From: Guillardia theta CCMP2712
Lineage: Eukaryota > Protista > Cryptophyta
DNA length: 64,000 nucleotides
Assembly (NCBI RefSeq): GCF_000315625.1
Contig: NW_005434652.1
Location: 426,384-490,383 of the forward strand
Direction of reading: 5' to 3'
The notes beneath the pieces are model-generated. The model saw only the letters and a program-made list of their open reading frames with translations, did not search any database and had not been told where the DNA came from. The position numbers and the translations under genes are program-made. This document shows, in pieces, positions 6,591-48,743 of this stretch. Position 1 is the stretch's first letter. Every line of letters begins with the position of its first letter.

Positions 6591-9500
6591 ATGGAGGATA
6601 ATGGCGCTCGGGCTTGCCTCTGGACTTGGTAGCCGCTGATGAAGTTGCCTTTCTCTCTCTCATTGCGATGTAGGGGCTGGGGAGAATTCGGAAGACTGGG
6701 ACATGGAGATACCTTGTCGCAGTTAGAGCCAAAACGTCTCCGCTTTGACAAACGCTTCCCTGTCTCACTATCCTTTACAGCATTGGCGCATGAATCATTG
6801 AATGGCGCCATCTACGTTGCATGTGGCGGGCACCACACAGTAGCTGTAACAGAAGACGGAGAGGTGAAATACGTTCCTTGAATGCTATCATCCCCTGCTT
6901 GTGCTTGAGCTCAGGGTTGACGGATCTTTCCCTGAAGGTGGTCTCGTGGGGTTGGGGTAACGAAGGGCAGTTGGGGAGTGGAAACGCCTTCGATCAAACG
7001 TGACACTCCCATCACATCGCTTCATCAACTGAACACGTTCATCAGAGTGCCGGCCGTGGTGAAAGCCTTGTCAAACCACCGGGTGTGCGGGGTCGCGTGC
7101 GGATACTATCACACTGCCGTCGTCACAGGTGCTTCTTGCTGGTGAGGTGGAAGATGCTGATCTCTTCCTGTGCAGATGTCGGTCTGGTGATGTGCTGGGG
7201 GAAGGGAAACTCCGGTCAACTGGGACAGGTGCAGACATCAATCCCAAAGCACCAGGACCTGCAAAGCAGTGTGCTGAGTTGAACCCCAGGGGGACTGGAC
7301 CAGCTCCTTGCTACCAAGAACGGTATCAACCCTCTACAACGAGAAGATTAGACAGGTCTGTTGGAGAAGGGAAGGAGATCTTTCATCCTGATGCTCTCTT
7401 CCTTCAGATCGCATGTGGCATGGCGCACACGCTTGCGCTGTCTGTGAACGGGGAGATATACAGCTGGGGAGCTGGAGCTGATGGGCAGCTGGGTATTTCA
7501 TTGTTCACGTGGCCTGCCAGTTTTGGGTTGAGAAGTCTCCCAAGGTGTAGGCAAACATCAGGAGGAGACGGCGGATGTGGCCACTCCGCAGAAGGTGCGT
7601 AGGATCAGAGGCATCCTTCTCGGATGATGCTGGGGTCACAGATGAAAGGGTATGACGGGTTTGAGCAGGTCAGGGTTGACGAGGAGGAGAAGTTTGAGTT
7701 CATAGCCTGTGGGAGTAGACACTGCATGTTAGAGCTGAAGTTCCAGTGGAAGGAGATGATACCACATTCCAGGGCTATCACGGACGACTGCCGACTGTTT
7801 TCATGGGGTCTCGGAGCAGATGGGTGAGATTTCTTCTTGTCTCCTTCCTCTCTGTCCCCTCTACTCCAACAGGATAATCTCCTCGTAATTTCGTTCTGTC
7901 GTGATGGTGCTGAGTTTGATTTCAGGCGTTTGGGTCTCGGGGATTCTGAGAGCCGATTCAGCCCCACTGTTGGTAGGTTGGGGAAGGAAAAGGATGTGGA
8001 AGAGAAAGGAACGGAGTTTGAGAGGAGGCAAGGTTCCAGGAAGGAGGAGGTGGGGGATGTTCCAGAAGCAGGAGAGGAGCCACAGCAAGCTGACGCTCTC
8101 TCGTCGCAGTCCGGCGGAGTATAGAGAACCTTCGGATCTGTTACGTGGCGGCAGGGGGCCATCACACGGCGGTGACTTGCTGATCAGCAGCCGCCAGCCA
8201 GTTCCAGTCTGATGGTGCCGTCCCATAGGTTCTCTCTGACAATGGCGAGATCTTCACCTGTGGTAGAGGGAGGTAAGGGGACGCGTTGCTCCTGCGCTCT
8301 ATCCCCACTGACCTTGCGGCCTCCTCCTCCTCCAGCTATGGACAGCTCGGGCATGGAGACGCTGATCCGCAGCTGACTCTGAAGAAGGCAAGAGCGTTGC
8401 GCCATGGTTGCCTCCTGCTCCATGTGCGTGACACAGAAGTTCAGATTGTCCAGCTGAGAGACAAGAAGATCATCAAAGCTGCTTGTGGCGACACGCACAC
8501 GTTGGTCATATCGACTGCTGGTATAGAGCGAGAACCTCCTCCTGTAGTCTCCATGCGATTCCTCCTCCTCCTCCTCCTCCTCCTCCTCCCCCTCCTCCTC
8601 CACTGCCACCTCCACTACCTCCTCCTCCTCCTCCTCCTCCTCCTCCTCCTCCTGATCATCGTCATCATCGTCATCATCGTCATCATCGTCATCGTCATCA
8701 TCCTGTAGATCTCCTGCGTCTGCTCTTCGTTTTTTCATCTCCTCTCTTCCAGTTTTCTGATCCTCACTCTGCCTCTTCACTTTTGCAGGCGAAGTTTTCG
8801 CATGGGGAGCAGCAGAAGACGGGCAGGTGCCATGAATTTCAATCTGATTCTTCAGCCCAAGTTTACCTTTCTTTCTGTTCGGCCACAGCTGGGGACGGGA
8901 GGGACAGAGGGAGCAAACTCTCCCGTCGAGCTCACAAGCCTTCGGGTGAACTTGATGTCGATCTCATCTCAGCACCCTACTCCCTCCTCCTCCTCCTCCT
9001 CCTCCTCCTTTCTTCGCTCCTTCCTTTCCTCTCCTCCTTTCCATTCCCCCTCCCCCTCGCCTCATCTCCTCTTCCTGCCCTCCCTGTGCGAGCACTTCTT
9101 GTAACTCCGTGTGGCCTAGTTGTTGTTCTCGTCCTCTCCTGACTTGTTGCTGGGCTCCCGCAGGGACTTGTCGGGGACGTGTCCTGTGGGCTCGTTCACT
9201 CTGCTGCTGTGCCGATGCAAATCTTTGCCGTCAGTTCCAAGGTGTGTAGTGCAAGGAGCAGAGAAGGGGGATGGGGAAGGGGATGGGGAGGAGGTTGGCT
9301 GGGGGGAGTGAGACAAGGAGGAGAGGGGAGGAAGATCAGGGCTGAGAGACGCGAAGATCGCAGAGCTGGAAGATGTGATTCAACGTCTCTCCACCAGCCT
9401 TCGAACGGCTGAAATGCAGGTGAGATCTCCTCGGGCTCAAAGTTCAATCCTCTTCCTCCTCGTCCTCCTCCTTGTCTTGTCCTTCTTCCGCATATTCGTT

Positions 9501-11618
9501 TTCCTCGCTCTCGCCCCTCCCCTACACTTTCTCATCCTCGTCTTCCTTGCATGTATTCTGCATCCTCTTCCTCCTTAGCCTCGTCTGTCTTCCTGCACAT
9601 CCGTGAGTAATGAGCTGTTCAGGTGCAAGCAGAGAGAAGGTCTCGGCTGGTTGCGGAGCACAAGTGAGCGAATCTGAGAATCGACGTGATTTGTTTGCTG
9701 ATCCTCGTCCTCCTCGTCCTTCTCCTTCTCCTTCACATTCTCCTTCGCCTTCTCCTTCCACTTCTACTTCTCCTTCTCCTTCTGCTCCCGTTTCTGCTCC
9801 TGCTCTTCCACCCCACTTCTTGTCGGCAGGTTGCAAGAGGCCATGCACCTCTTGTCAAAGAGGGGAGCTGTGCATAAGGTGGTACATGGGAGCGAAGCAA
9901 CAGGAAATGGAGAGGAGGAGCATCGCAATCATGCTGTGAGGCACGAGGCCCCTCCTATGGTGGATGTGAGTTGATCGAGGAGGAGGAGGAGGAGGAGGAG
10001 GAGGAGGAGGAGGAGGAGGAAGTGTGTGAGTGTGTGAGTTGTAAGGAGGGGCGTTGGAGACAACGAGTATTTTGCTGTTTGCTGATGTCATCAGTAATTC
10101 CCTGCTGGTAGGCGTGCGTACAGACTGAGGGTTACTTGCTCTATCCCCGCAAGAGTTACGCCAAGAGCTCGGTAGCAACAGCAGAACCTGTGGCCCCTCC
10201 AGCAGGCAACCAGGATGACAGGGCCTCCTCGCGCCAGGGGGAAGGAGAGAGGAAGAAGGAGAGAGAGAGCGAGAAGGAAGGAGAGAGGAAGAAGACGGGT
10301 GAAGGTCCTACAGAGACTGAGAGCTTCAAAAGGGACGGGCTGCTCCGACGAGCTCAGCAGATCCAGCAGGTGAGGAGGAGGAAGCAGGGGGGATCCCCCC
10401 TGATTGGACGAGGAGGAGGAGGGAGACAACAGGAGGAGGAGGAGGAGGAGGAGGAGGAGGAGGAGGAGGAGGAGGAGGAGGAGGATGGAAACCTAACTCA
10501 TGAGAAGGAGACGATGGGGAAGAATTCAACGCACAACGCTAGCGAGATGCGAGAGCTTCAACTATCCTTCCTCGAGGACGTTCGATGTACATCCCTTCCT
10601 TCGAGCCCCATGCCCTCCTCCTCTCGCCCTCCTCCTTACCTCTTGCTCGCTGACGGGGTCGCAGGCGGAGGAAGCATCACGACTTCGTCCATGGGGAGCG
10701 AATCAGACTCCATCCTCGAGCTGGTTGTCCTCTTCCTTCCTCTCCCTGCTCTCCTCTCCTCCGCAGCCTCTTTCATCTCCCCGTGAATCTTCCGTTCTTG
10801 CAGTTCACTCCATCCCTCTCTCCTCCCCTCCTCTCCCTCCCTTCCTCCCCTCCACCGTCCTCCTCTACCTCTACCTCTCCCTCTCTCCCCTCGCCTCCCC
10901 CCTCCTCGTCCTCGGCGTTGCTGACAGTGGCATGCAGGAGCTCGAGTGTGACGAGAGCTTGAAGGACACCTACCAGCTGCAGCACGACGTCCTGCCGGAG
11001 TATTACCTTCCCCAGTCAGGTGGAGGGCCAGGTGGAGACCGACTTTGTGCCTCCCCACGTTCGCAGCCTGACGAGGGGAAGCAGCAGGGGTGTTAGCTGG
11101 GAAAGGAGAAAGGCACGTGCTTGAGGATGGGTGGGCTCCTGCTCCTGCTGTCGCTCCTCTGACGAGGCTGAGCAGGAAGACGAAGCATGTAGGGAAGCAA
11201 GATTTGATGGAGGCGAACAGCCATGCGCAAGCTGCTGGTAAGATTTCTCCTCGTCCTCCTCGTCATCGTCTCCTCGTCCTCGTCCTCGTCCTCCTCTTAT
11301 TCCTCCTCCGCTCTCAGATGCTTCTCCTCTGATCGCCTCAACAGGAACCAGCCGACTTAACAGCAAGACGAGGCAGATGTTCAAGATCTCCAGCAAAGTC
11401 AAGCGCGGGGTACGAGTCGAAGAGGAAACGAAGGCGGAGGGAGGGAGAGGCATGGGACTGGGGAAGGGGAAGGAGAGAGGGAGGAGGAGGAAAGGCAAGG
11501 AAGGAGGATGGGAAACGGAAGCGAGAGGAGATACGGCAAGATGACTTGCTGGCAGGTGACAGGGTTTCTGAAGGAGCTGAAGGAGGAGCTCATTTCTGAT
11601 CGCCCGCATGACGGATAA
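6591..11618 (+). CDS. RCC1-repeat beta-propeller protein with long low-complexity C-terminal tail (many introns)
   Basis: Repeated WGWGEFGRLGHG, VACGGHHTVAV, WGWGNEGQLG, WGKGNSGQLG, IACGMAHTLAL, WGAGADGQLG, ACGDTHT, VSCGLVHSAA over 6.6-9.2 kb. Plausible later exons end ...KELKEELISDRPHDG* at ~11618; the tail is less certain. Confidence 0.8.
8560..8702. repeat. Compound (CCT)n/(ATC,GTC)n microsatellite in an RCC1 gene intron
   Basis: Direct array. Similar (GAG/CCT)n tracts at ~9978-10020, 10430-10482, 11650-11705, 34895-34950 and 37505-37545. Confidence 0.9.
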
Positions 11619-11780
11619 GAACATTATTCAGTAAGATTAAACAAGTCTATCCTCCTCCTCCTCCTCCTCCTCCTCCTCCTCCTCCTCCTCCTTCTCCTCC
11701 TCCTCGTCCACATGCTCCTGCCATTCTGTCCCACCTATTCTTTCAAGCTTCTCTTCTTCGCCTTTCCTCCACTTGCGAGG

Positions 11781-14700
11781 CTAGCCCAGCCGCAGCTCCC
11801 TCAAGGCCCGAGCAGACAGCTCCTCTCTCCTGACCTCCTCCCTGTACGTCTTGCTCGGGTTTTCTCGCAGCAGCCACGTCCTTAGCGTGTGTGGCTCTCC
11901 CCTGGCATCCGCGACTTGCATGCTGACTGCCGTCACCACTTCCCACCCCCGGCAGACCCGCCCGTTGATGCAGCCATAAGGCCCGGTCCCCTTCCTCCAC
12001 TCCTCCTCCATCTCTCCTCCCAGCCCCAGCCGCTGCCGGAGAGCCTCGGGGACGCGACGAAGATCGCGCATGGCGGAGATTCTCAGGTCCTCGAACTCTC
12101 GGATGGCGGCAGGAAGTGACTCTGCAAGCTGCCACCTCCTCTCCTTGCGCAGCCAAGCAGAGCAGGCACCTGCATGCTCGTCAGAGGGTGGAGGAGGAGG
12201 ACGGAGAGGAGGAGGAGCAGGAGACCTGAGTGCACGTCAGTGCGATTGGCGAAGATTGAGTCCCAGCAGAGCAGCGGGTTCTTCCAGTAGATCTCTCCCT
12301 CCCTGTGGACGAGGCTGTCACAGACGTGCCTCACATAGACAAGCAAGGGGGTGAAAGGAAAGGAGGAGACGTGGAAGGGAAGGAGGAGGGAGGAGATATG
12401 TAGATGGAGCTTTTTGAAGGCTTGGAGGTTTGGAGAAGTGGTAGCAGCAGCAGAAGAGAGAGCAAAAAGAGCTGACGGAAGGGGGTAGCAGGAGCCATTT
12501 AGGAGAAGGAGCAGAAGATGGAAAAGAAGCAGGTGGAGGAGGGGAGAAAGAGAGGAGGAAGAGGAGGAAGAGGAGGAAGAGGATGGGTGGAGGAAGAGGT
12601 TGGCACCTGGCGATGCACTCATTCCACTGCTCCGTGGTGACACATGCTGATGATCTGCTCGTCACGTCAGTCGTCCGACCGATAGCAGCAGCATGAGACC
12701 GTGCGAAGAACCGAGAGTCTGTGTAGACGATGGCGGCAGAGCCCGGGGGGCAGCGGCCTGACCAACCGTCCCCCTCCGCCTGAGGGACGTCGGAGCACAC
12801 GGGGATAGGAACTTCAGCGAGGAGGACGGGGAGTGAATGGGACAGGTTGTAGCATCCTTGGCTCATCAGGGGCGGGGCAGACTCGTCGAAGGTTGCATTG
12901 CAGGTGAGGGATACCATGTCGCTGCCGCCCGAGTGACGCGCGAGTTTGCTGCTCTCGATGGCGCTCCCTTCCTCCTTCCCGCCCGCGCTGCGGGTCCTTC
13001 GCCTGCAGCCCTCCGCCTCCTCTCTGCACGTGCCCAGTGAGCTCTTGAGCTCTGCTAGCTCCAGCTGAAGCCTCCGCCCGTCGTCCTTGCACTTCTCAGC
13101 CAGCTGGTCTGCGTGCTTCTTCTTCCCTTCAAGTTCTGTCATCTCCCTCCTGGACGCGTCCTGTGACTCTCTGTACGCCTGGCTGCTGTTGTGAGCAACC
13201 TCCTCGAGCATCTCCTTGTCTCGCTCGCAAGCTGCAAGTTTCTGTTGCTCGACGAGGATTACATCGCGTCCTTCCCCTTGCAGCCTCACCAGCTCCTTCT
13301 GGCAGCTTGCGGCCTCCTGCACTGCCTCCTCCTGCTTCTTCTCCAGCTCCACCAGCTTGCTGACTTCTCTGCTCTCTCTCTCCTGTGACGAGATCAACTC
13401 GTCTCGGCAGCTCACCAACTCCTCCTCTGCTTTCCTCTTCACCCTCCCCAGCTCTTCCATCTCGATCTTCCATGCCCCTCGCAAGTCTTGGCAGGTCTTG
13501 TTGGCGTTCCGTGCTGCCTCCTCCAGCACGTCCTTGTCCTTCATGCAGCCCGCTAGCCTCTCTTGCTCGGCCAGGTAGCGGCCGTTCAGTGCCGTCTGTG
13601 AGGACTTGACTGCCGTCAGCTCTGCATTCCTTGACGCCAACTCGGCCTCGAGCTCTTGGAGCTTCTCAACCGCTACTGACGGAACGATCGTCAGGTTGTT
13701 CCTCCCTTTGGCATGCGTAGCGCACGTAGCAACATCGTTATGACAGCAGGTCGAAGCCATGCAAGTATCAACAGGTCCAATCGGTGAGAATGCAGAGCCA
13801 GACACGAAATGCTGGGATACGTTGGCGTCCTCCAACATGGGCACCGGTGAGAGGAGGACGAGGGAAACCAAGACCGTTGCAATTCCAGATAGGATCAGCA
13901 TCATGAACTTCCATGGGGAGAACCGAGTAGCTAGCTCTCTTTTCTTTTCCTGCAGATCTCGTTTCGTCTCCTGCAAATGTCTTCAGCCCACCTGTTGGCA
14001 ACGACAGGATGCATAGTACCTCATACTGCTCTTCCTTCCTCCTCAGCCGCTCCAGCGCCTCCTGCATCCCGTTTTCCTTCGATCGCAACTGTGCCTGTAC
14101 CTCTCTGACGTCTTCATCCTTCCTCTTCAACTGCTCCTCTACCTCCCCGATCTCTACATCCTTCCTCCTCAGCCGCTCCTCTACCTCCTGTATCCTGGCT
14201 TCCTTCGATCGTAGCTGTGCCCGTACCTCCTCCACCACTTCGTCCTTCGATCGTAGCTGTGCCCGTACCTCCTCCACCACTTCGTCCTTCGATCGTAGCT
14301 GTGCCCGTACCTCTGTAAGCTCTTCATCCCTCCTCCTCAGCCGCTCCTCTACATCTTGCATCCCGTCCTCCTTCGATCGTAGCTGTGCCCGTACCTCCTC
14401 CACCTCTTGATCCTTCTCCAGCAGCAGCTTCTGCAGATCTAGAATCTTTATTCTCGATGCTTCGTCTTCATACGGCTCCGTCTGAAGGTTTTTATCCGCA
14501 GATTGTTTCAGCGATCCCACAGACAAGTCAAAGACAGCAGACTGGAGTGACGACGTCAAATCTTCAATTTCACTGCAAGTGCCGTGCAGCTTCCCGAGCA
14601 TGGCACCGATTTCACTGTCCCCCGGGTACGCATCGGGCTCAGTTTGAACAGGGGAGCGAGGGGTACAAGGCTCCGAGTTGGTCGACTCAGAGTCATTGTC

Positions 14701-43460: not shown

Positions 43461-44687
43461 TGACTAGGTGCAACCTCTGCATCCCTGTAACAAGAGGGCT
43501 GTTAGAGCGTTCATCATCCTCGTTGTAAACTTCCAATTCCGTCTAACAAGGACGTGCCACAAACTTCTGCCCCTGAGAGAACCTCGAGTTTGTTCTTCTG
43601 GCCGTCTCTTCAATGGATTGGCAAGTTCGTCTTATCTCATCTTGTGCTTCATTGCTTCGAATATCACTTTGCCCTTTGCTTCTCCTCCTCCATACTTATT
43701 GTCAAAGTCCTCCTGTCCAGATCCCACTGACGACCTGGTTCTTCCCTCGCTTCTCCCGTCTCTTCCTTTCCACCACATCACTCCTCTCATCTCTTCGAAC
43801 ATCAGTTCCATCCTTTCCTCTTCTCCCTCCTCTATCGCACCTTCCCTTCTCCCTTCCCTTCCCTTCCGTTCCCTTCACTTCCTGTCCATCTCCGAATTTC
43901 CTGGTGGACCACCGTGTCGCTTTCACTTATGAGTCTGGACGCACCACCCCTACCCCCAAATTTCAAATCTCCCTACCCAGCGAAATCCGTCCGGTCATGC
44001 TGGACCCTGCCCCCCTGCCCAGCGCGCAACACCTGACGATGCTCCCATGGCTCCTCCTCCTCTCCTCTGACCTCTCCTCTCCTTGATAACTTCATCTCTG
44101 TCGTACCTCTGCTCCTTCTCCTCTCGCTCCTTCTGCCCCTTCTCTCGAAAATCTCACCACTTCCCGTTGCGTCTACCCTTCCGCTCTTACTCCCTTAAAG
44201 TGATCTCCCCCTCCCCTACGTGTTCTTCCCTCCTCTGCACGTTCTTCCCTGTTCTATCTCCCTCGTCCCTGCTTTTCCCTACATCTTTACATTCTTCTTT
44301 GAATCTCGACCACCTCCATTCATGTTTATGAACCTTTCCCCTTTCCCAAATCTTTCATCGAATACCTTCAGATTTCAACCCTCTTGCTCAAATCCTCTAT
44401 CATGTGCCTCCTTCCCGCTTGAAGTGTTTCTTCTGAAGCGTTTCTTCCAATTATTGTTCTGGTTGTCTCGGGCGGTGATTACAATTGAATCTTGTAACTG
44501 AACTTGGAGCAGATGAAATATTCAGCAAACCAAGAACTCACTGCTGATCAAGACCGCCATCGTCGTGTCTCACTACCACGATAGATACAGAATGCTGCTG
44601 CAAGGAGATAAAATGCTCTTGACGAAGTTTATCATACTAAGCTTACATCTTTTGCTGATCTTGCAAGTATCAGAAGAGAATGCCGTG

Positions 44688-47370
44688 ATGAAATCTGATT
44701 CCGACTACAAATCCCTTATGTTCCCAACAAAAACGCTCGAGAACTCTCAACCTTCATTTGGGATAAGAGAAAAATCAACCACGGCCGCGGACCAGTCTTT
44801 GAAACGGCAAAGGCCTGAGTATTCAGACAGCCATGATCAACATAGGGGGAAAAGATTGGGCCAGGGGACGCCAGTCCGCGTTGTCAAGAAGAGGCTTGGT
44901 ACATAACTCTTCCCCCTTGTCGCCCGATGATCCCTTGGCGAATTTCTTGCAGAGCGAGGATTTCGATCGAATAGGAGAAGTGACCTGAGAAATCGAAAAG
45001 TTCCAGCTGGTTGGGATATGTGCCGGTATACATCACCGATATGTTCTCAAGAGACTGATGTGCATCGCTGCTAGCAAATTTGGAGAGCCGGTTGGAGGTA
45101 GCAAGATGTTTTCAATGAAGGTAATTCGTTGTGATCCATTGCGGGATGGCCCCATACAGACTGCACGTGCGACAGGTCCCCCTTTGTGCAGACTACAGGA
45201 TGAATCCTGCGGACAAGTGCGACCGCAGCTGTTCTTTTTGTAGCGCTCGTGAGTTCGATGACGGCAGGTTCACCCCCGCGGATTGCCTTGAGATGCTGAG
45301 GGCTCAGAATCGGGATCTGGGACTAGTCGTGGATCTTACATTCAGTGATAGATATTATGACGGGTAAGTGGACATATGTCCAAGAACGAAGGATATTTCT
45401 GGCTGCTCTTCGCCTGCTTCCTTGAGCTGAAGTTTGACTTGTTGCAGGAGAGAGTTCTCTATGAGGGGGGTGGAGGTGATCAAAATCAGAGAGTGCGGCC
45501 ATGGGGTTATCCCAAATAGAAAGAATGTGGTTGCCTTCATGAATCTGGTGAAGGTATGAAAGAAAACTCCCGTGCAAGCGTATCTCAAACGTGTTTCCTA
45601 GGCATTCACAGCAAGAAAGCCGGACAAGTACATCGCCGTCCACTGCACTCATGGCCTGAATCGCTCAGGCTACTACATCGTGAGTTTCCTGATCGAGGTA
45701 AACGCCGTGAGCGACGAGTCTCTTGGTGAACTCAATCGAAGGTTTTGCACTTCACCCTCGAACAAGCCATGGCAGCATTCACGCAGGCATCACCGCCCGG
45801 GTTGTGGGACAATGAGTATATCCTTGCCCTGTACAAGCAGCACAACGCTGGAGTTCCCGTGAGTCTACCAGGGAATCCACCATGGCGAGCAAACAAGACC
45901 CATGCGCGGTCCAACTTTGGGGGGAAGATTCAAACACGCAAACAAGAATTTCTTGCTTCAAGCTCGGTGAAAAGAAGTCCTGTGCAAGTTGGTCAGCTTG
46001 CCAATATGACAAACGGTTTCTTCACGGGTAAATTGTAGATTGAAGAGTCAGACTGTTCCGTTTGACCTATTTCTCCAACAGCAAGAGAAAAAGCATTTCC
46101 ACCAAGAAGCGTGGTGATCCTAAGAGGACTGCCGGGGAGCGGCAAAAGTACTATGGCATCGAAACTTGCAGTCAGGAGGGCCCCGAACAGGACATCTACC
46201 AAGGGAGGCGCTTCAATGCAGAGGGAAGGGAGCGATTCGAAGGTGGTGTGTTCCTCAGATCATTTCTTCTACGTCGATGGAAATTACTCCTTCGACTTGG
46301 CCCGCATCGGGGAAGCGCATCAGGTGCGTTTGCCCGACGTAACTTCTCCCACCTGATGTCAAACGTGTCCCACCCCAACAGAAGTGCATGCAAGCCTTCA
46401 TCCTGGCTGTTCAGAGCGAGGTGGACCTGATCGTCGTAGACAACACGCACAGGTACCTAACGTGCTGCACCGTCGATTGTGGCTCAGCGCGGAGGTTTCC
46501 AGTTGCCTCTGGGAGTATGAGAATTACAAGCTGCTGGCTCAAGGGTACGGGTACCAAGTGGAGGTTGACCGGCCTCGTGATGTGCCACGTCACTTTCTTG
46601 TTCTGAACGCTGCCCAAGGTGATTGAGCTCGTCTGCCCTGACCTAGACTCCGCGAGGATGTTCTGCTCCCGTAGCAGGCACGATGTCCCTTGGACCGTCG
46701 CACACAGGCAGGAGCTCTTGCAGCCTGCTTGAGAGCATGCTGTTGACTTGCTCCCGGACAGGATGTGGCAGAGATGGGAGCCTGACCCAGCGGCCAAGTA
46801 CATCTACCCAGAAGCGACAGAACAGCAGACGCAGAAAGAGCGCGTCCCTCACGAGGGAAGGGAAAGGAGAGAGTGTCCGAGTGGAGTCAACCCAGCTGGG
46901 AAGCAGGTGGGAGGTGACGTTGGGACGAATAATTCGAAGGAGGAAAGGGTGTGGCCCCGAAGGGGGTCGGGCGGGCCCGATGAAAGCATATTGCGTGCCT
47001 TCCCTTCTTTATTCCAGCCCTCCAATCGGTCGCGCATTCTCGCGCCCGGATGTCGACGCCTCCCCTCCAACAGCAGCAGCGACAGGCAGGGGAAGAGCAA
47101 CATCACCCTGGTCTTGAAGCAGGCTCATGTTCTACGATGGGTCACCGGCCTGGTCGCCAAACGGCATGTAAGAGCCGCAGCTTCTTTACGTTGTTGCCCT
47201 CCAGTTTGATCATCTCTACAGGAGGGCTCCAAGCGCTTCAGGCAGGTCATCCAGAATGGCCTCAGGACCTCTCGCTCGGTCAACGCGGGGGTTCAACTTA
47301 CTCAATCGTCGGGCGGGGAAGTGCAGACGAAATAGTTGAAGTGGCTCAGCAGGCTTTTCAAGTACTATAA
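44688..47370 (+). CDS. Fusion of a cysteine-dependent RNA 5'-triphosphatase (DUSP11/capping-TPase family) and an N4BP2/AAA_33-type P-loop polynucleotide kinase; exact start and stop uncertain
   Basis: VPAGWDMC..FGEPV..MKVPL, LGLVVDLTFSDRYYD, HCTHGLNRSGY (45641-45673); intron 46028-46081 joins in frame to VVILRGLPGSGKST, CSSDHFF, GEAHQ, IVVDNTH, WEYENY, SRHDVP. Confidence 0.85.
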
Positions 47371-48743
47371 ATGATGTTTTAATGTTCCGTTCAACATCAA
47401 CCTGACAGCCATAAAGGTAAACGGCGTAGCAAAAAAATGCCAGGATTGAGGTGTACCGTGTCATGCCCAACCGTTGAACTGCCGGGCGCCCCGGGTCGAT
47501 TCGAGTCTCCTCATCATCAGTGTCCTCGTACTGATTTTTAACCTAACTTTGAGGAAAGCCTGACTCGCCTATGCAACAGTGTCACCTGCAGTGTCACCTC
47601 GTCCTGAATTTCCTGCTGCCCGGCGGGCCCCGGGCAGCCGGCGGGCCTCTGCCACCCGGCCGGGCGGCCGGGCCGGGCGCCAGTTTTGCCGGCGGTTACA
47701 GAGCAGAGGACTCGGTCAGTTTCGGTATAACTGCTGCATCGGAATTTTTAGATGTTTTTTTTTTCCGAACTTGACCCCGCCCCCAGTTTCACACCCCCTC
47801 TTTTTACAGTGTCTGGAGGGGTCTGGGCGTGGGTACTAGAAAGATACCAGGATGAACTTTACAAGAGGGGTGGGTCCAAGAAAGGGAGAAATGGGGGTGG
47901 GGTGATAACAGGGTCCATTTTTTTCAAAGTCTGTCAAGTCTCTGGATATGGGAAGGGTGGGGGTGTGTGAAGTCCTGGAATTTGAGGGGTACTCTCAGGT
48001 CAGAGGGGTGGGTGAGCAAAACGTTCATTTTGACACGGGGTGGGGTAACAGATCGGATTGAGGGCGGAATTGGACTTTGTGACACGGGTCTTAATACGTT
48101 ACATGGGGGTGGGGGTGACTTTGGTCAGTCAACAGGAGGGGTACTAAATGGGTAATAGCCGGGTACTTGTCAACATATTGCAGTTGATGCGCAGTAAATG
48201 AATGTTGGGGGTAGGGTCACTCGCGGTACAGGGGGTGGGGTGAGAGCTACACCTTTGACTACTTGAACTTTCATGCTAGCTTGTCTCTGCTGCGTATGCA
48301 GTTGCGGGATATGACGCTTTTCAGAAGCCTGTAGCGTGCCCATACCCCTCTCCTTCTTACACTTTCATCTCCACTTCCATTGCTCTCCCTTCCACTGAGT
48401 CCTCCCTGGCTCCTCCACCCGTTACATCATGACTAGTGTCTGCCAAAGCGCTCCCGGTACCGTTGTTGAACGGTCCTTTCCTTCCATGCTAGAATTTGTA
48501 GCATCGCATAGATCACGCTGCAATAAGTCAATAGAATATCAACACTGAGCACTGAGCAAGCCGAATGAAGGAACAGTACTGCGATACAGTCCCTGCCTCA
48601 TACCTTTGAAATGCTTTCGAGTTCAAAGACAACTCATGCCCTGTTTTTGTGCGAATGCTGACTTGCTGACTGGACGTTCTAAAACGCACTGATTGTAAAG
48701 CGCAGCAAGGTGCTGGTTAGCTGATGAGGACTTGATCGGGGTC

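What the first reader, a model, noticed from the sequence alone, without database searches (positions are those of the whole stretch)
44990..46810. RNA 5'-triphosphatase fused to a polynucleotide kinase: candidate 5'-end-remodelling enzyme
Seen: a complete cysteine-phosphatase domain with HCTHGLNRSGY. It joins in frame through a canonical 54-nt intron (46028-46081, ...FFT-A-REKAFPPRSVVILRGLPGSGKST) to a P-loop kinase with SxDxFF, AHQ, VDNT and HxVP motifs. Established: this phosphatase normally stands alone (DUSP11/PIR1, baculovirus PTP; 5'-ppp to 5'-p) or is fused to guanylyltransferase in capping enzymes. No KxDG guanylyltransferase motif follows here. N4BP2-type P-loops are 5'-OH polynucleotide kinases. 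Inference: both domains would converge on a 5'-monophosphate, from 5'-ppp and from 5'-OH, preparing RNA for XRN decay, ligation/repair or Argonaute loading, possibly in antiviral defence. I do not know this architecture from any described protein.
Basis: partly seen in the sequence, partly recalled or inferred. Interest (0 to 1): 0.85.

Follow-up and report, generated by a model that had tools for sequence, protein, structure and literature searches.

The report
Capping-type RNA triphosphatase–kinase fusion, cryptophyte
An algal gene joins the phosphate-trimming half of the animal/plant mRNA-capping enzyme to an RNA 5'-hydroxyl kinase behind an import-signal-like leader, a pairing not found described, which may work on RNA ends inside the alga's relict endosymbiont nucleus.

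Summary
The fusion is real. Two other organisms carry the same fusion, one in a single unbroken ORF (P0291). The kinase is an N4BP2/CNPase-type P-loop with the polynucleotide-kinase general-base Asp. No Piwi domain was found in the genome, and the host has its own tunnel-type capping enzyme. Best guess (0.35): an imported two-job enzyme giving the nucleomorph its capping triphosphatase and a 5'-OH kinase for decay. Rivals: convergence on 5'-monophosphate, 3'-end healing, a weakened trap. Cysteine phosphatase plus kinase is known from Swiss-army-knife repair proteins, but with another phosphatase class. Activity and location are untested. The scan's notes had no earlier report of it.

The parts
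44592..47335 (+). Whole gene, 14 exons, 677 aa; exons 44592-44898, 44953-45025, 45075-45120, 45176-45216, 45268-45363, 45448-45553, 45602-45697, 45742-46027, 46082-46323, 46382-46452, 46503-46563, 46619-46707, 46762-47167, 47222-47335
   Evidence: all 13 joints in RNA-type contigs; open frame and spliced length 2049 nt match contig X2/5; transcribed from 44511 or earlier
44592..44687 (+). Signal-peptide-like leader (aa 1-32; hydrophobic core aa 13-24 at 44628-44663); residue after the likely cut is non-aromatic
   Evidence: hydropathy 2.9 over 11 aa; open and this hydrophobic in 0.035% of dinucleotide shuffles; orthologue P0291 has a similar leader (2.35), unfused paralogue L083 has none. No signal-peptide predictor was available.
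44688..44999 (+). Ser/Thr/Lys/Arg-rich spacer ending in a basic, NLS-like stretch (includes intron 44899-44952)
   Evidence: sequence; P0291 has a KGKRCRKKR stretch at the same place; NLS role is inference
45000..45890 (+). Cysteine RNA 5'-phosphatase domain, capping-enzyme type; catalytic Cys238 at 45644; Ser272 (mouse Arg160 position) at 45790; Asp278 (mouse Lys166 / DUSP11 Arg192 position) at 45808
46028..46081 (+). GT-AG intron joining the phosphatase/linker exon to the kinase exon; holds an in-frame stop
   Evidence: skipped in X1, X2, X3
46105..46790 (+). AAA_33 P-loop kinase of the N4BP2/CNPase N-terminal type; Walker A 46126-46152, general-base Asp410 at 46258
46791..47335 (+). Low-complexity C-terminal tail, no family match
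45217..45267 (+). 51-nt in-frame intron without stop, spliced in X2 and X3, retained in X1 (adds 17 Cys-rich residues inside the phosphatase domain)

Best explanation
A nucleus-encoded, two-activity RNA 5'-end enzyme that is imported into the periplastid compartment and nucleomorph of a cryptophyte. Shown: one spliced 677-aa protein; phosphatase of the capping-enzyme branch with intact Cys, His+2, Asn+5 and Arg+6; polynucleotide-kinase fold with Walker A and general-base Asp; conserved in two other organisms; hydrophobic leader in two of two full N-termini. Inferred: the leader is a bipartite signal for the periplastid compartment; the phosphatase removes only the gamma phosphate (ppp to pp) through a cysteinyl-phosphate and so feeds the nucleomorph's own guanylyltransferase; the kinase separately turns 5'-OH ends of cleavage fragments into 5'-phosphate for 5'-to-3' decay. 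The two domains then serve two different substrates in a gene-poor compartment and do not converge on one product.
For: Splicing and length. Orthologues P0291/P0294 (one ORF, DSPc + AAA_33) and L077. Capping type: 96 vs 66 vs 55 bits, exon 8 hits only capping enzymes, Atlas TM 0.84-0.86 to capping enzymes vs 0.75-0.77 to PIR1, PPG clade SH-aLRT 95. Capping domains remove gamma only, PIR1 family gamma and beta (10.1101/2020.08.03.235143). Host capping is covered by a separate leaderless tunnel triphosphatase-guanylyltransferase gene on C29, and no second tunnel enzyme was seen. Leader statistics; non-aromatic start after a signal peptide means periplastid retention (PMC4494062); nucleomorph RNAs are capped (PMC3388326; PMC6461891). 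Precedent in this genome: one of two RtcB genes has a signal peptide. Kinase: profile and fold match T4 Pnk, Clostridium Pnkp, Mucorales kinases; Asp base (PMC11571804); N4BP2 kinase proposed to prime Xrn1 decay (PMC6598757).
Against: No signal-peptide predictor or localisation; the cut site is not a clean small-X-small pattern, and Met33 could be the real start. Whether the nucleomorph lacks its own triphosphatase could not be checked (its genome is not in G000; papers did not list it); that it encodes a lone guanylyltransferase is from memory. Two conserved residues are changed in all fusions (Arg160 to Ser, Lys166 to Asp); from memory the first is essential in BVP, so triphosphatase activity may be low or altered. 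Red algae cap with a tunnel enzyme (PMC5172449), so this would be a replacement. Fusion of two unrelated jobs is less tidy than a shared pathway. Structural Z-scores for 1i9t (26.0) and BVP (25.4) are tied.
Confidence: 0.35

Rival explanations
1. One reading: the phosphatase removes gamma and beta phosphates like DUSP11/BVP, the kinase phosphorylates 5'-OH, and both give 5'-monophosphate RNA for XRN-type decay or ligation, in whichever compartment.
For: Gives the fusion one logic. P-loop reads GLNR as in DUSP11, with His+2 and Asn+5 kept; NRSG occurs in baculovirus phosphatases. The role of Arg192 is only 'suggested' (PMC12058148).
Against: Capping-type by sequence, tree and Atlas fold match; Asp at the Arg192 position where 15 of 16 named or near DUSP11 rows inspected have Arg and the other Lys; no Piwi domain.
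Confidence: 0.22
2. A new end-healing polynucleotide kinase-phosphatase: the capping-type domain has been retuned to remove 2' or 3' phosphomonoesters, with Asp278 as the general acid that RNA triphosphatases lack, while the kinase heals the 5'-OH for an ATP-dependent ligase.
For: The kinase's nearest solved relatives are end-healing enzymes, mostly fused to phosphatases. Swiss-army-knife proteins pair a cysteine phosphatase with this kind of kinase and a ligase (L041). The basic-to-Asp change sits at the residue said to touch the leaving phosphate and is conserved.
Against: His+2 and Asn+5 of 5'-polyphosphate enzymes are kept. The Asp is also in unfused paralogues L082/L083. No ligase domain; the leader-bearing ligase found is RtcB, which needs no healing (established knowledge). 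Lack of a general acid in triphosphatases is from memory; distances could not be measured on the model.
Confidence: 0.2
3. The phosphatase is weak and acts mainly as a ppp-RNA-binding module that brings the kinase to primary transcripts or their fragments.
For: The Arg of the helix-end AR motif, present in 45 of 50 aligned relatives, is Ser in all fusions; from memory its Ala mutant kills BVP. Catalytically dead PIR-1 binds ppp-RNA.
Against: Cys, His, Asn, Arg of the P-loop and the W6, K25, D60, Y67, Y68 equivalents are all kept in the window gene and P0291.
Confidence: 0.1
4. Same chemistry as the best explanation but in the host nucleus or cytosol: translation starts at Met33, the hydrophobic extension is incidental, and the enzyme trims Pol III or RdRP products and primes 5'-OH fragments.
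For: Basic NLS-like stretch; unfused paralogues elsewhere start with an NLS-like MPRKKK and no leader; an upstream short ORF starts at 44513.
Against: Two in-frame upstream Met codons on the transcript, shuffle probability 0.00035, an independent leader in P0291; host capping is already supplied.
Confidence: 0.11
5. Two separate genes or an annotation artefact.
For: Intron retention would stop translation at 46038; contigs hide rare forms.
Against: Junction spliced in three studies; P0291 has both domains in one intron-free ORF.
Confidence: 0.02

Closest known systems
Metazoan/plant capping enzyme RNGTT/Mce1, triphosphatase domain (PDB 1i9s, 2c46)
   Same: Best sequence and fold match; HCTHGxNR loop, PPG signature and proline-rich extension.
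   Different: No guanylyltransferase; kinase instead; Arg160 to Ser and Lys166 to Asp; N-terminal leader; host already has a tunnel-type capping enzyme.
DUSP11/PIR1 and baculovirus phosphatase BVP
   Same: Same fold and P-loop; no guanylyltransferase.
   Different: Lacks the RGHxxER signature and Arg192; separate clade; none of 120 DUSP11-like hits carried a kinase.
Swiss-army-knife RNA repair proteins (Pfam 2H-SAK, PTP-SAK, AAA_33, RNA_ligase)
   Same: Cysteine phosphatase directly followed by an AAA_33 kinase; one such gene is in this genome (C16).
   Different: Phosphatase there is PTP-SAK (HCGGGKGR; E 1e-62 for L041, no PTP-SAK hit for P0291); carries 2H and ligase domains, absent here.
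N4BP2 / N4BP2L / CNPase N-terminal kinases; T4 Pnkp, bacterial Pnkp, Mucorales tRNA-splicing kinases
   Same: P-loop fold, Walker A, general-base Asp, SxDxFF / AH / VDNT / HxVP motifs.
   Different: Known partners are Smr, 2H, HAD or metallophosphoesterase domains, or none; nearest relatives here are stand-alone 140-240 aa proteins of unnamed origin.
Trypanosoma TbCe1 (kinase + guanylyltransferase; from memory, not tested)
   Same: A capping-pathway domain fused to a P-loop kinase.
   Different: Adenylate-kinase-like domain turning pRNA into ppRNA, fused to the transferase, not the triphosphatase.

Membership tests
RNA 5'-phosphatases of the cysteine phosphatase superfamily | HCTHGxNR(T/S) loop with His+2 and Asn+5 | tested here: met
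   45641-45670
RNA 5'-phosphatases of the cysteine phosphatase superfamily | Fold of Mce1/BVP/PIR1 | tested here: met
   Model of orthologue P0291 domain, pLDDT 89; Z 26.0, rmsd 2.1, 187 aligned to 1i9t; next family (PRL) Z 19.5. Window protein itself not folded.
RNA 5'-phosphatases of the cysteine phosphatase superfamily | Conserved Arg of the AR motif (mouse Arg160, BVP Arg153) | tested here: not met
   Ser in window gene, P0291/P0281, L077
DUSP11/PIR1/BVP | Arg at Cys+40 (DUSP11 Arg192) in an RGHxxER signature | tested here: not met
   Asp278 in a PPGLWD signature
DUSP11/PIR1/BVP | Groups with DUSP11/BVP in a tree | tested here: not met
   PPG clade SH-aLRT 95, quick tree without bootstrap, no capping-enzyme rows available
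DUSP11/PIR1/BVP | Removes gamma and beta phosphate | not testable with these tools
   needs assay
RNGTT/Mce1 capping enzymes | Triphosphatase domain with PPG signature | tested here: met
RNGTT/Mce1 capping enzymes | C-terminal guanylyltransferase with KxDG | tested here: not met
   no KxDG in 677 aa; no Pfam hit in later exons
Swiss-army-knife RNA repair proteins | PTP-SAK phosphatase | tested here: not met
   P0291 has no PF22784 hit at E 0.001; L041 has 1e-62
Swiss-army-knife RNA repair proteins | RNA ligase and 2H domains | tested here: not met
5'-OH polynucleotide kinases (N4BP2/T4 type) | Walker A and general-base Asp after strand 2 | tested here: met
   Lys372, Asp410; aligns to T4 Pnk NRDD motif through profile A3
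5'-OH polynucleotide kinases (N4BP2/T4 type) | Fold closest to polynucleotide kinases | tested here: inconclusive
   Homologue P0035 model: Z 16.6 to Clostridium Pnkp, tied with seryl-tRNA(Sec) kinase 16.3; T4 15.1
5'-OH polynucleotide kinases (N4BP2/T4 type) | Phosphorylates 5'-OH RNA or DNA | not testable with these tools
   needs assay
Periplastid-targeted cryptophyte proteins | Signal peptide followed by transit-like peptide with non-aromatic first residue | tested here: inconclusive
   hydropathy and shuffle test only, in two orthologues; no predictor

The most novel reading that the evidence does not exclude
The nucleomorph, a red-algal relict nucleus whose ancestors capped mRNA with a tunnel-type enzyme, now caps with an imported animal/plant-type cysteine triphosphatase fused to a 5'-OH kinase; or, equally new, a single basic-to-Asp change has turned the capping triphosphatase scaffold into an RNA 3'-end-healing phosphatase.
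Probability: 0.35. Interest if true: 0.78.

Novelty: new variant of a known kind. Interest (0 to 1): 0.6.

Why it matters
It adds a third fate for the cysteine RNA triphosphatase domain besides capping enzyme and DUSP11, in an organism that caps host mRNA with the other enzyme class. It is a natural variant at the very residue proposed to separate gamma-only from gamma-plus-beta phosphatases, so one purified protein tests that idea. If imported, it names a candidate for how nucleomorph RNA 5' ends are processed, which the papers read here do not explain.

Tried and rejected
A joined model was built inside scripts from window coordinates and compared locally with sequences already fetched; later comparisons were exon by exon. 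Homologue searches from P0010 and avipox DUSP11 gave no fusion. Viral contigs: 23 and 17 loci, all stand-alone phosphatases, no kinase in frame. ESM Atlas feature searches gave nothing usable. 'This is the host capping triphosphatase' was rejected (C29 gene). 'Swiss-army-knife member' was rejected. tRNA-ligation role is unlikely: RtcB present twice, no Trl1 ligase hit, though that search rang nowhere. Burroughs and Aravind 2016, Changela 2001 and Sankhala 2014 were not held, so their supplementary architectures were not checked. Organisms of P0291 and L077 could not be named.

Full report
Setting. The window lies on contig C22 of an 87,145,349-base, 669-contig assembly. From memory these figures match the cryptophyte Guillardia theta; the short introns fit. 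This identification is not a tool result.

Observation. Contigs of three RNA-type runs from three studies skip 46028-46081, and together show 13 joints. The resulting 14-exon model is one open frame of 677 codons from 44592 to the stop at 47333-47335, and its spliced length from 44591 to 47349 is 2049 nt, the exact length of contig 5 of run X2. One intron is GC-AG, and the in-frame intron 45217-45267 is retained in run X1. There is no KxDG motif. The gene is the only HCxHGxNR phosphatase found in the genome, with the caveat that introns can split a motif.

Conservation. A scan of metagenome contigs for the catalytic motif returned a distinct group with NRSG in the loop and PG(I/L)WD after the last helix. 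L077 has the phosphatase exons, a PPW linker and a Walker A stretch that join in frame through a GT-AG intron. The L092 cluster led to P0291 and P0294, where phosphatase, PPW linker and AAA_33 kinase lie in one ORF without an intron; exon-by-exon identity to the window gene is 29-75%. So three lineages carry the fusion. P0291's neighbour is DNA polymerase delta subunit 2, whose match in G000 is on the same contig C22, 258 kb away, a weak hint of kinship. L080-L084, L082, L086 and L087 are paralogues with a zinc-finger-like N-terminus and no kinase seen in up to 2.7 kb downstream.

The phosphatase. The catalytic exon hits capping enzymes first, then BVP, then PIR1; the next exon hits only capping enzymes. 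The P0291 domain scores 96, 66 and 55 bits against the three. Its model matches 1i9t at Z 26.0, BVP 25.4, PIR1 24.6 (near ties) and Atlas capping-enzyme clusters at TM 0.84-0.86 against 0.75-0.77 for PIR1 clusters. A quick tree puts the PPG group apart from DUSP11 and BVP (no capping-enzyme rows were available). Capping domains remove the gamma phosphate, PIR1-family enzymes gamma and beta (10.1101/2020.08.03.235143), and DUSP11 Arg192 is the residue suggested for the second step (PMC12058148). That position, 40 residues after the Cys, is Lys166 in mouse and Asp in all three fusions and in the unfused paralogues. The Arg six residues before it is Ser in the fusions only.

The kinase. It belongs with stand-alone 140-240 aa AAA_33 proteins and CNPase/N4BP2-like domains. 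A profile of them finds T4 Pnk, mammalian PNKP, Clostridium Pnkp, Mucorales tRNA-splicing kinases and seryl-tRNA(Sec) kinase; the fold search agrees. The Asp of SSDHFF aligns with the general base shown essential in MciKIN-type enzymes (PMC11571804). A 5'-OH polynucleotide acceptor is the likely but unshown activity.

The leader. Upstream of Met33 the transcript carries 32 in-frame codons with a 12-residue hydrophobic core; shuffles give this 0.035% of the time, P0291 has its own hydrophobic leader, and the unfused paralogue has none. Both leaders are followed by a spacer and a basic stretch next to the phosphatase. In cryptophytes a signal peptide followed by a non-aromatic residue sends proteins to the periplastid compartment (PMC4494062), where capped nucleomorph RNAs are made (PMC3388326, PMC6461891). 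The genome shows the same pattern for RtcB: one copy without and one with a signal peptide.

Genomic context. Host capping is supplied by a tunnel triphosphatase with guanylyltransferase motifs on C29, without a leader. No Piwi domain was found. A Swiss-army-knife repair gene on C16 shows that cysteine phosphatase plus AAA_33 kinase is a known pairing, but with PTP-SAK and a ligase. Neighbours in the window (TPR, heavy-metal domain, ion channel) say nothing about function.

Verdict. A real, expressed, conserved fusion of two known RNA-end domains in an arrangement I could not find described, though InterPro and the main RNA-repair survey could not be consulted. I favour an imported enzyme with two separate 5'-end jobs (0.35), ahead of convergence on 5'-monophosphate (0.22), end healing (0.20), a host-located version (0.11) and a weakened trap (0.10). 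Novelty: new variant of a known kind. Interest 0.6.

Noticed in passing
window 47501-47563: A 60-bp element just downstream of the gene has at least 47 copies in the genome (498 candidates), often in close opposite-facing pairs, like ends of a small transposon; a GC-rich stretch with GGGGTGGG motifs follows to about 48240.
   Followed up: partly
L041:2-2667 (G000:C16, about 9240-11900); partial copy on C628: Swiss-army-knife RNA repair gene: 2H-SAK, PTP-SAK, AAA_33 kinase and RNA ligase, almost intron-free.
   Followed up: partly
L035:1450-3600 (G000:C29, about 285950-288100): Host capping enzyme appears to be a tunnel-type triphosphatase fused to a guanylyltransferase (EIEAK, EVELE, KTDG, LDGEV motifs on one strand); splicing not checked.
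   Followed up: partly
L036, L038 (G000:C267, 22700-34000): AT-rich, intron-free contig with giant-virus-like genes, including a 956-aa capping-enzyme-like ORF and a kinase-phosphatase; observed only.
   Followed up: no
L192 (G000:C98, about 120300-121700, minus strand): Second RtcB gene with a signal peptide and two LRGG motifs in its leader, probably for the periplastid compartment.
   Followed up: partly
L080-L084, L082, L086, L087: Paralogous phosphatases with a RanBP2-like Cys motif in front and a Gly/Arg-rich region behind, no kinase seen; not found in G000.
   Followed up: partly
P0276, P0218, P0277, P0128: Other fusions in metagenome proteins: RNA ligase domain plus DUSP11-type phosphatase; DUSP11 plus dsRNA-binding domains; DUSP11 plus SRI domain; 2H-like domain plus this kinase type.
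   Followed up: no
L103, L116, L118, L125: Stand-alone PPG-type phosphatases with His at the conserved Arg position, beside packaging-ATPase-like P-loop genes of giant-virus-like contigs.
   Followed up: no
window 44513-44584: A 23-codon upstream ORF on the transcript, ending 8 bases before the first in-frame Met.
   Followed up: no
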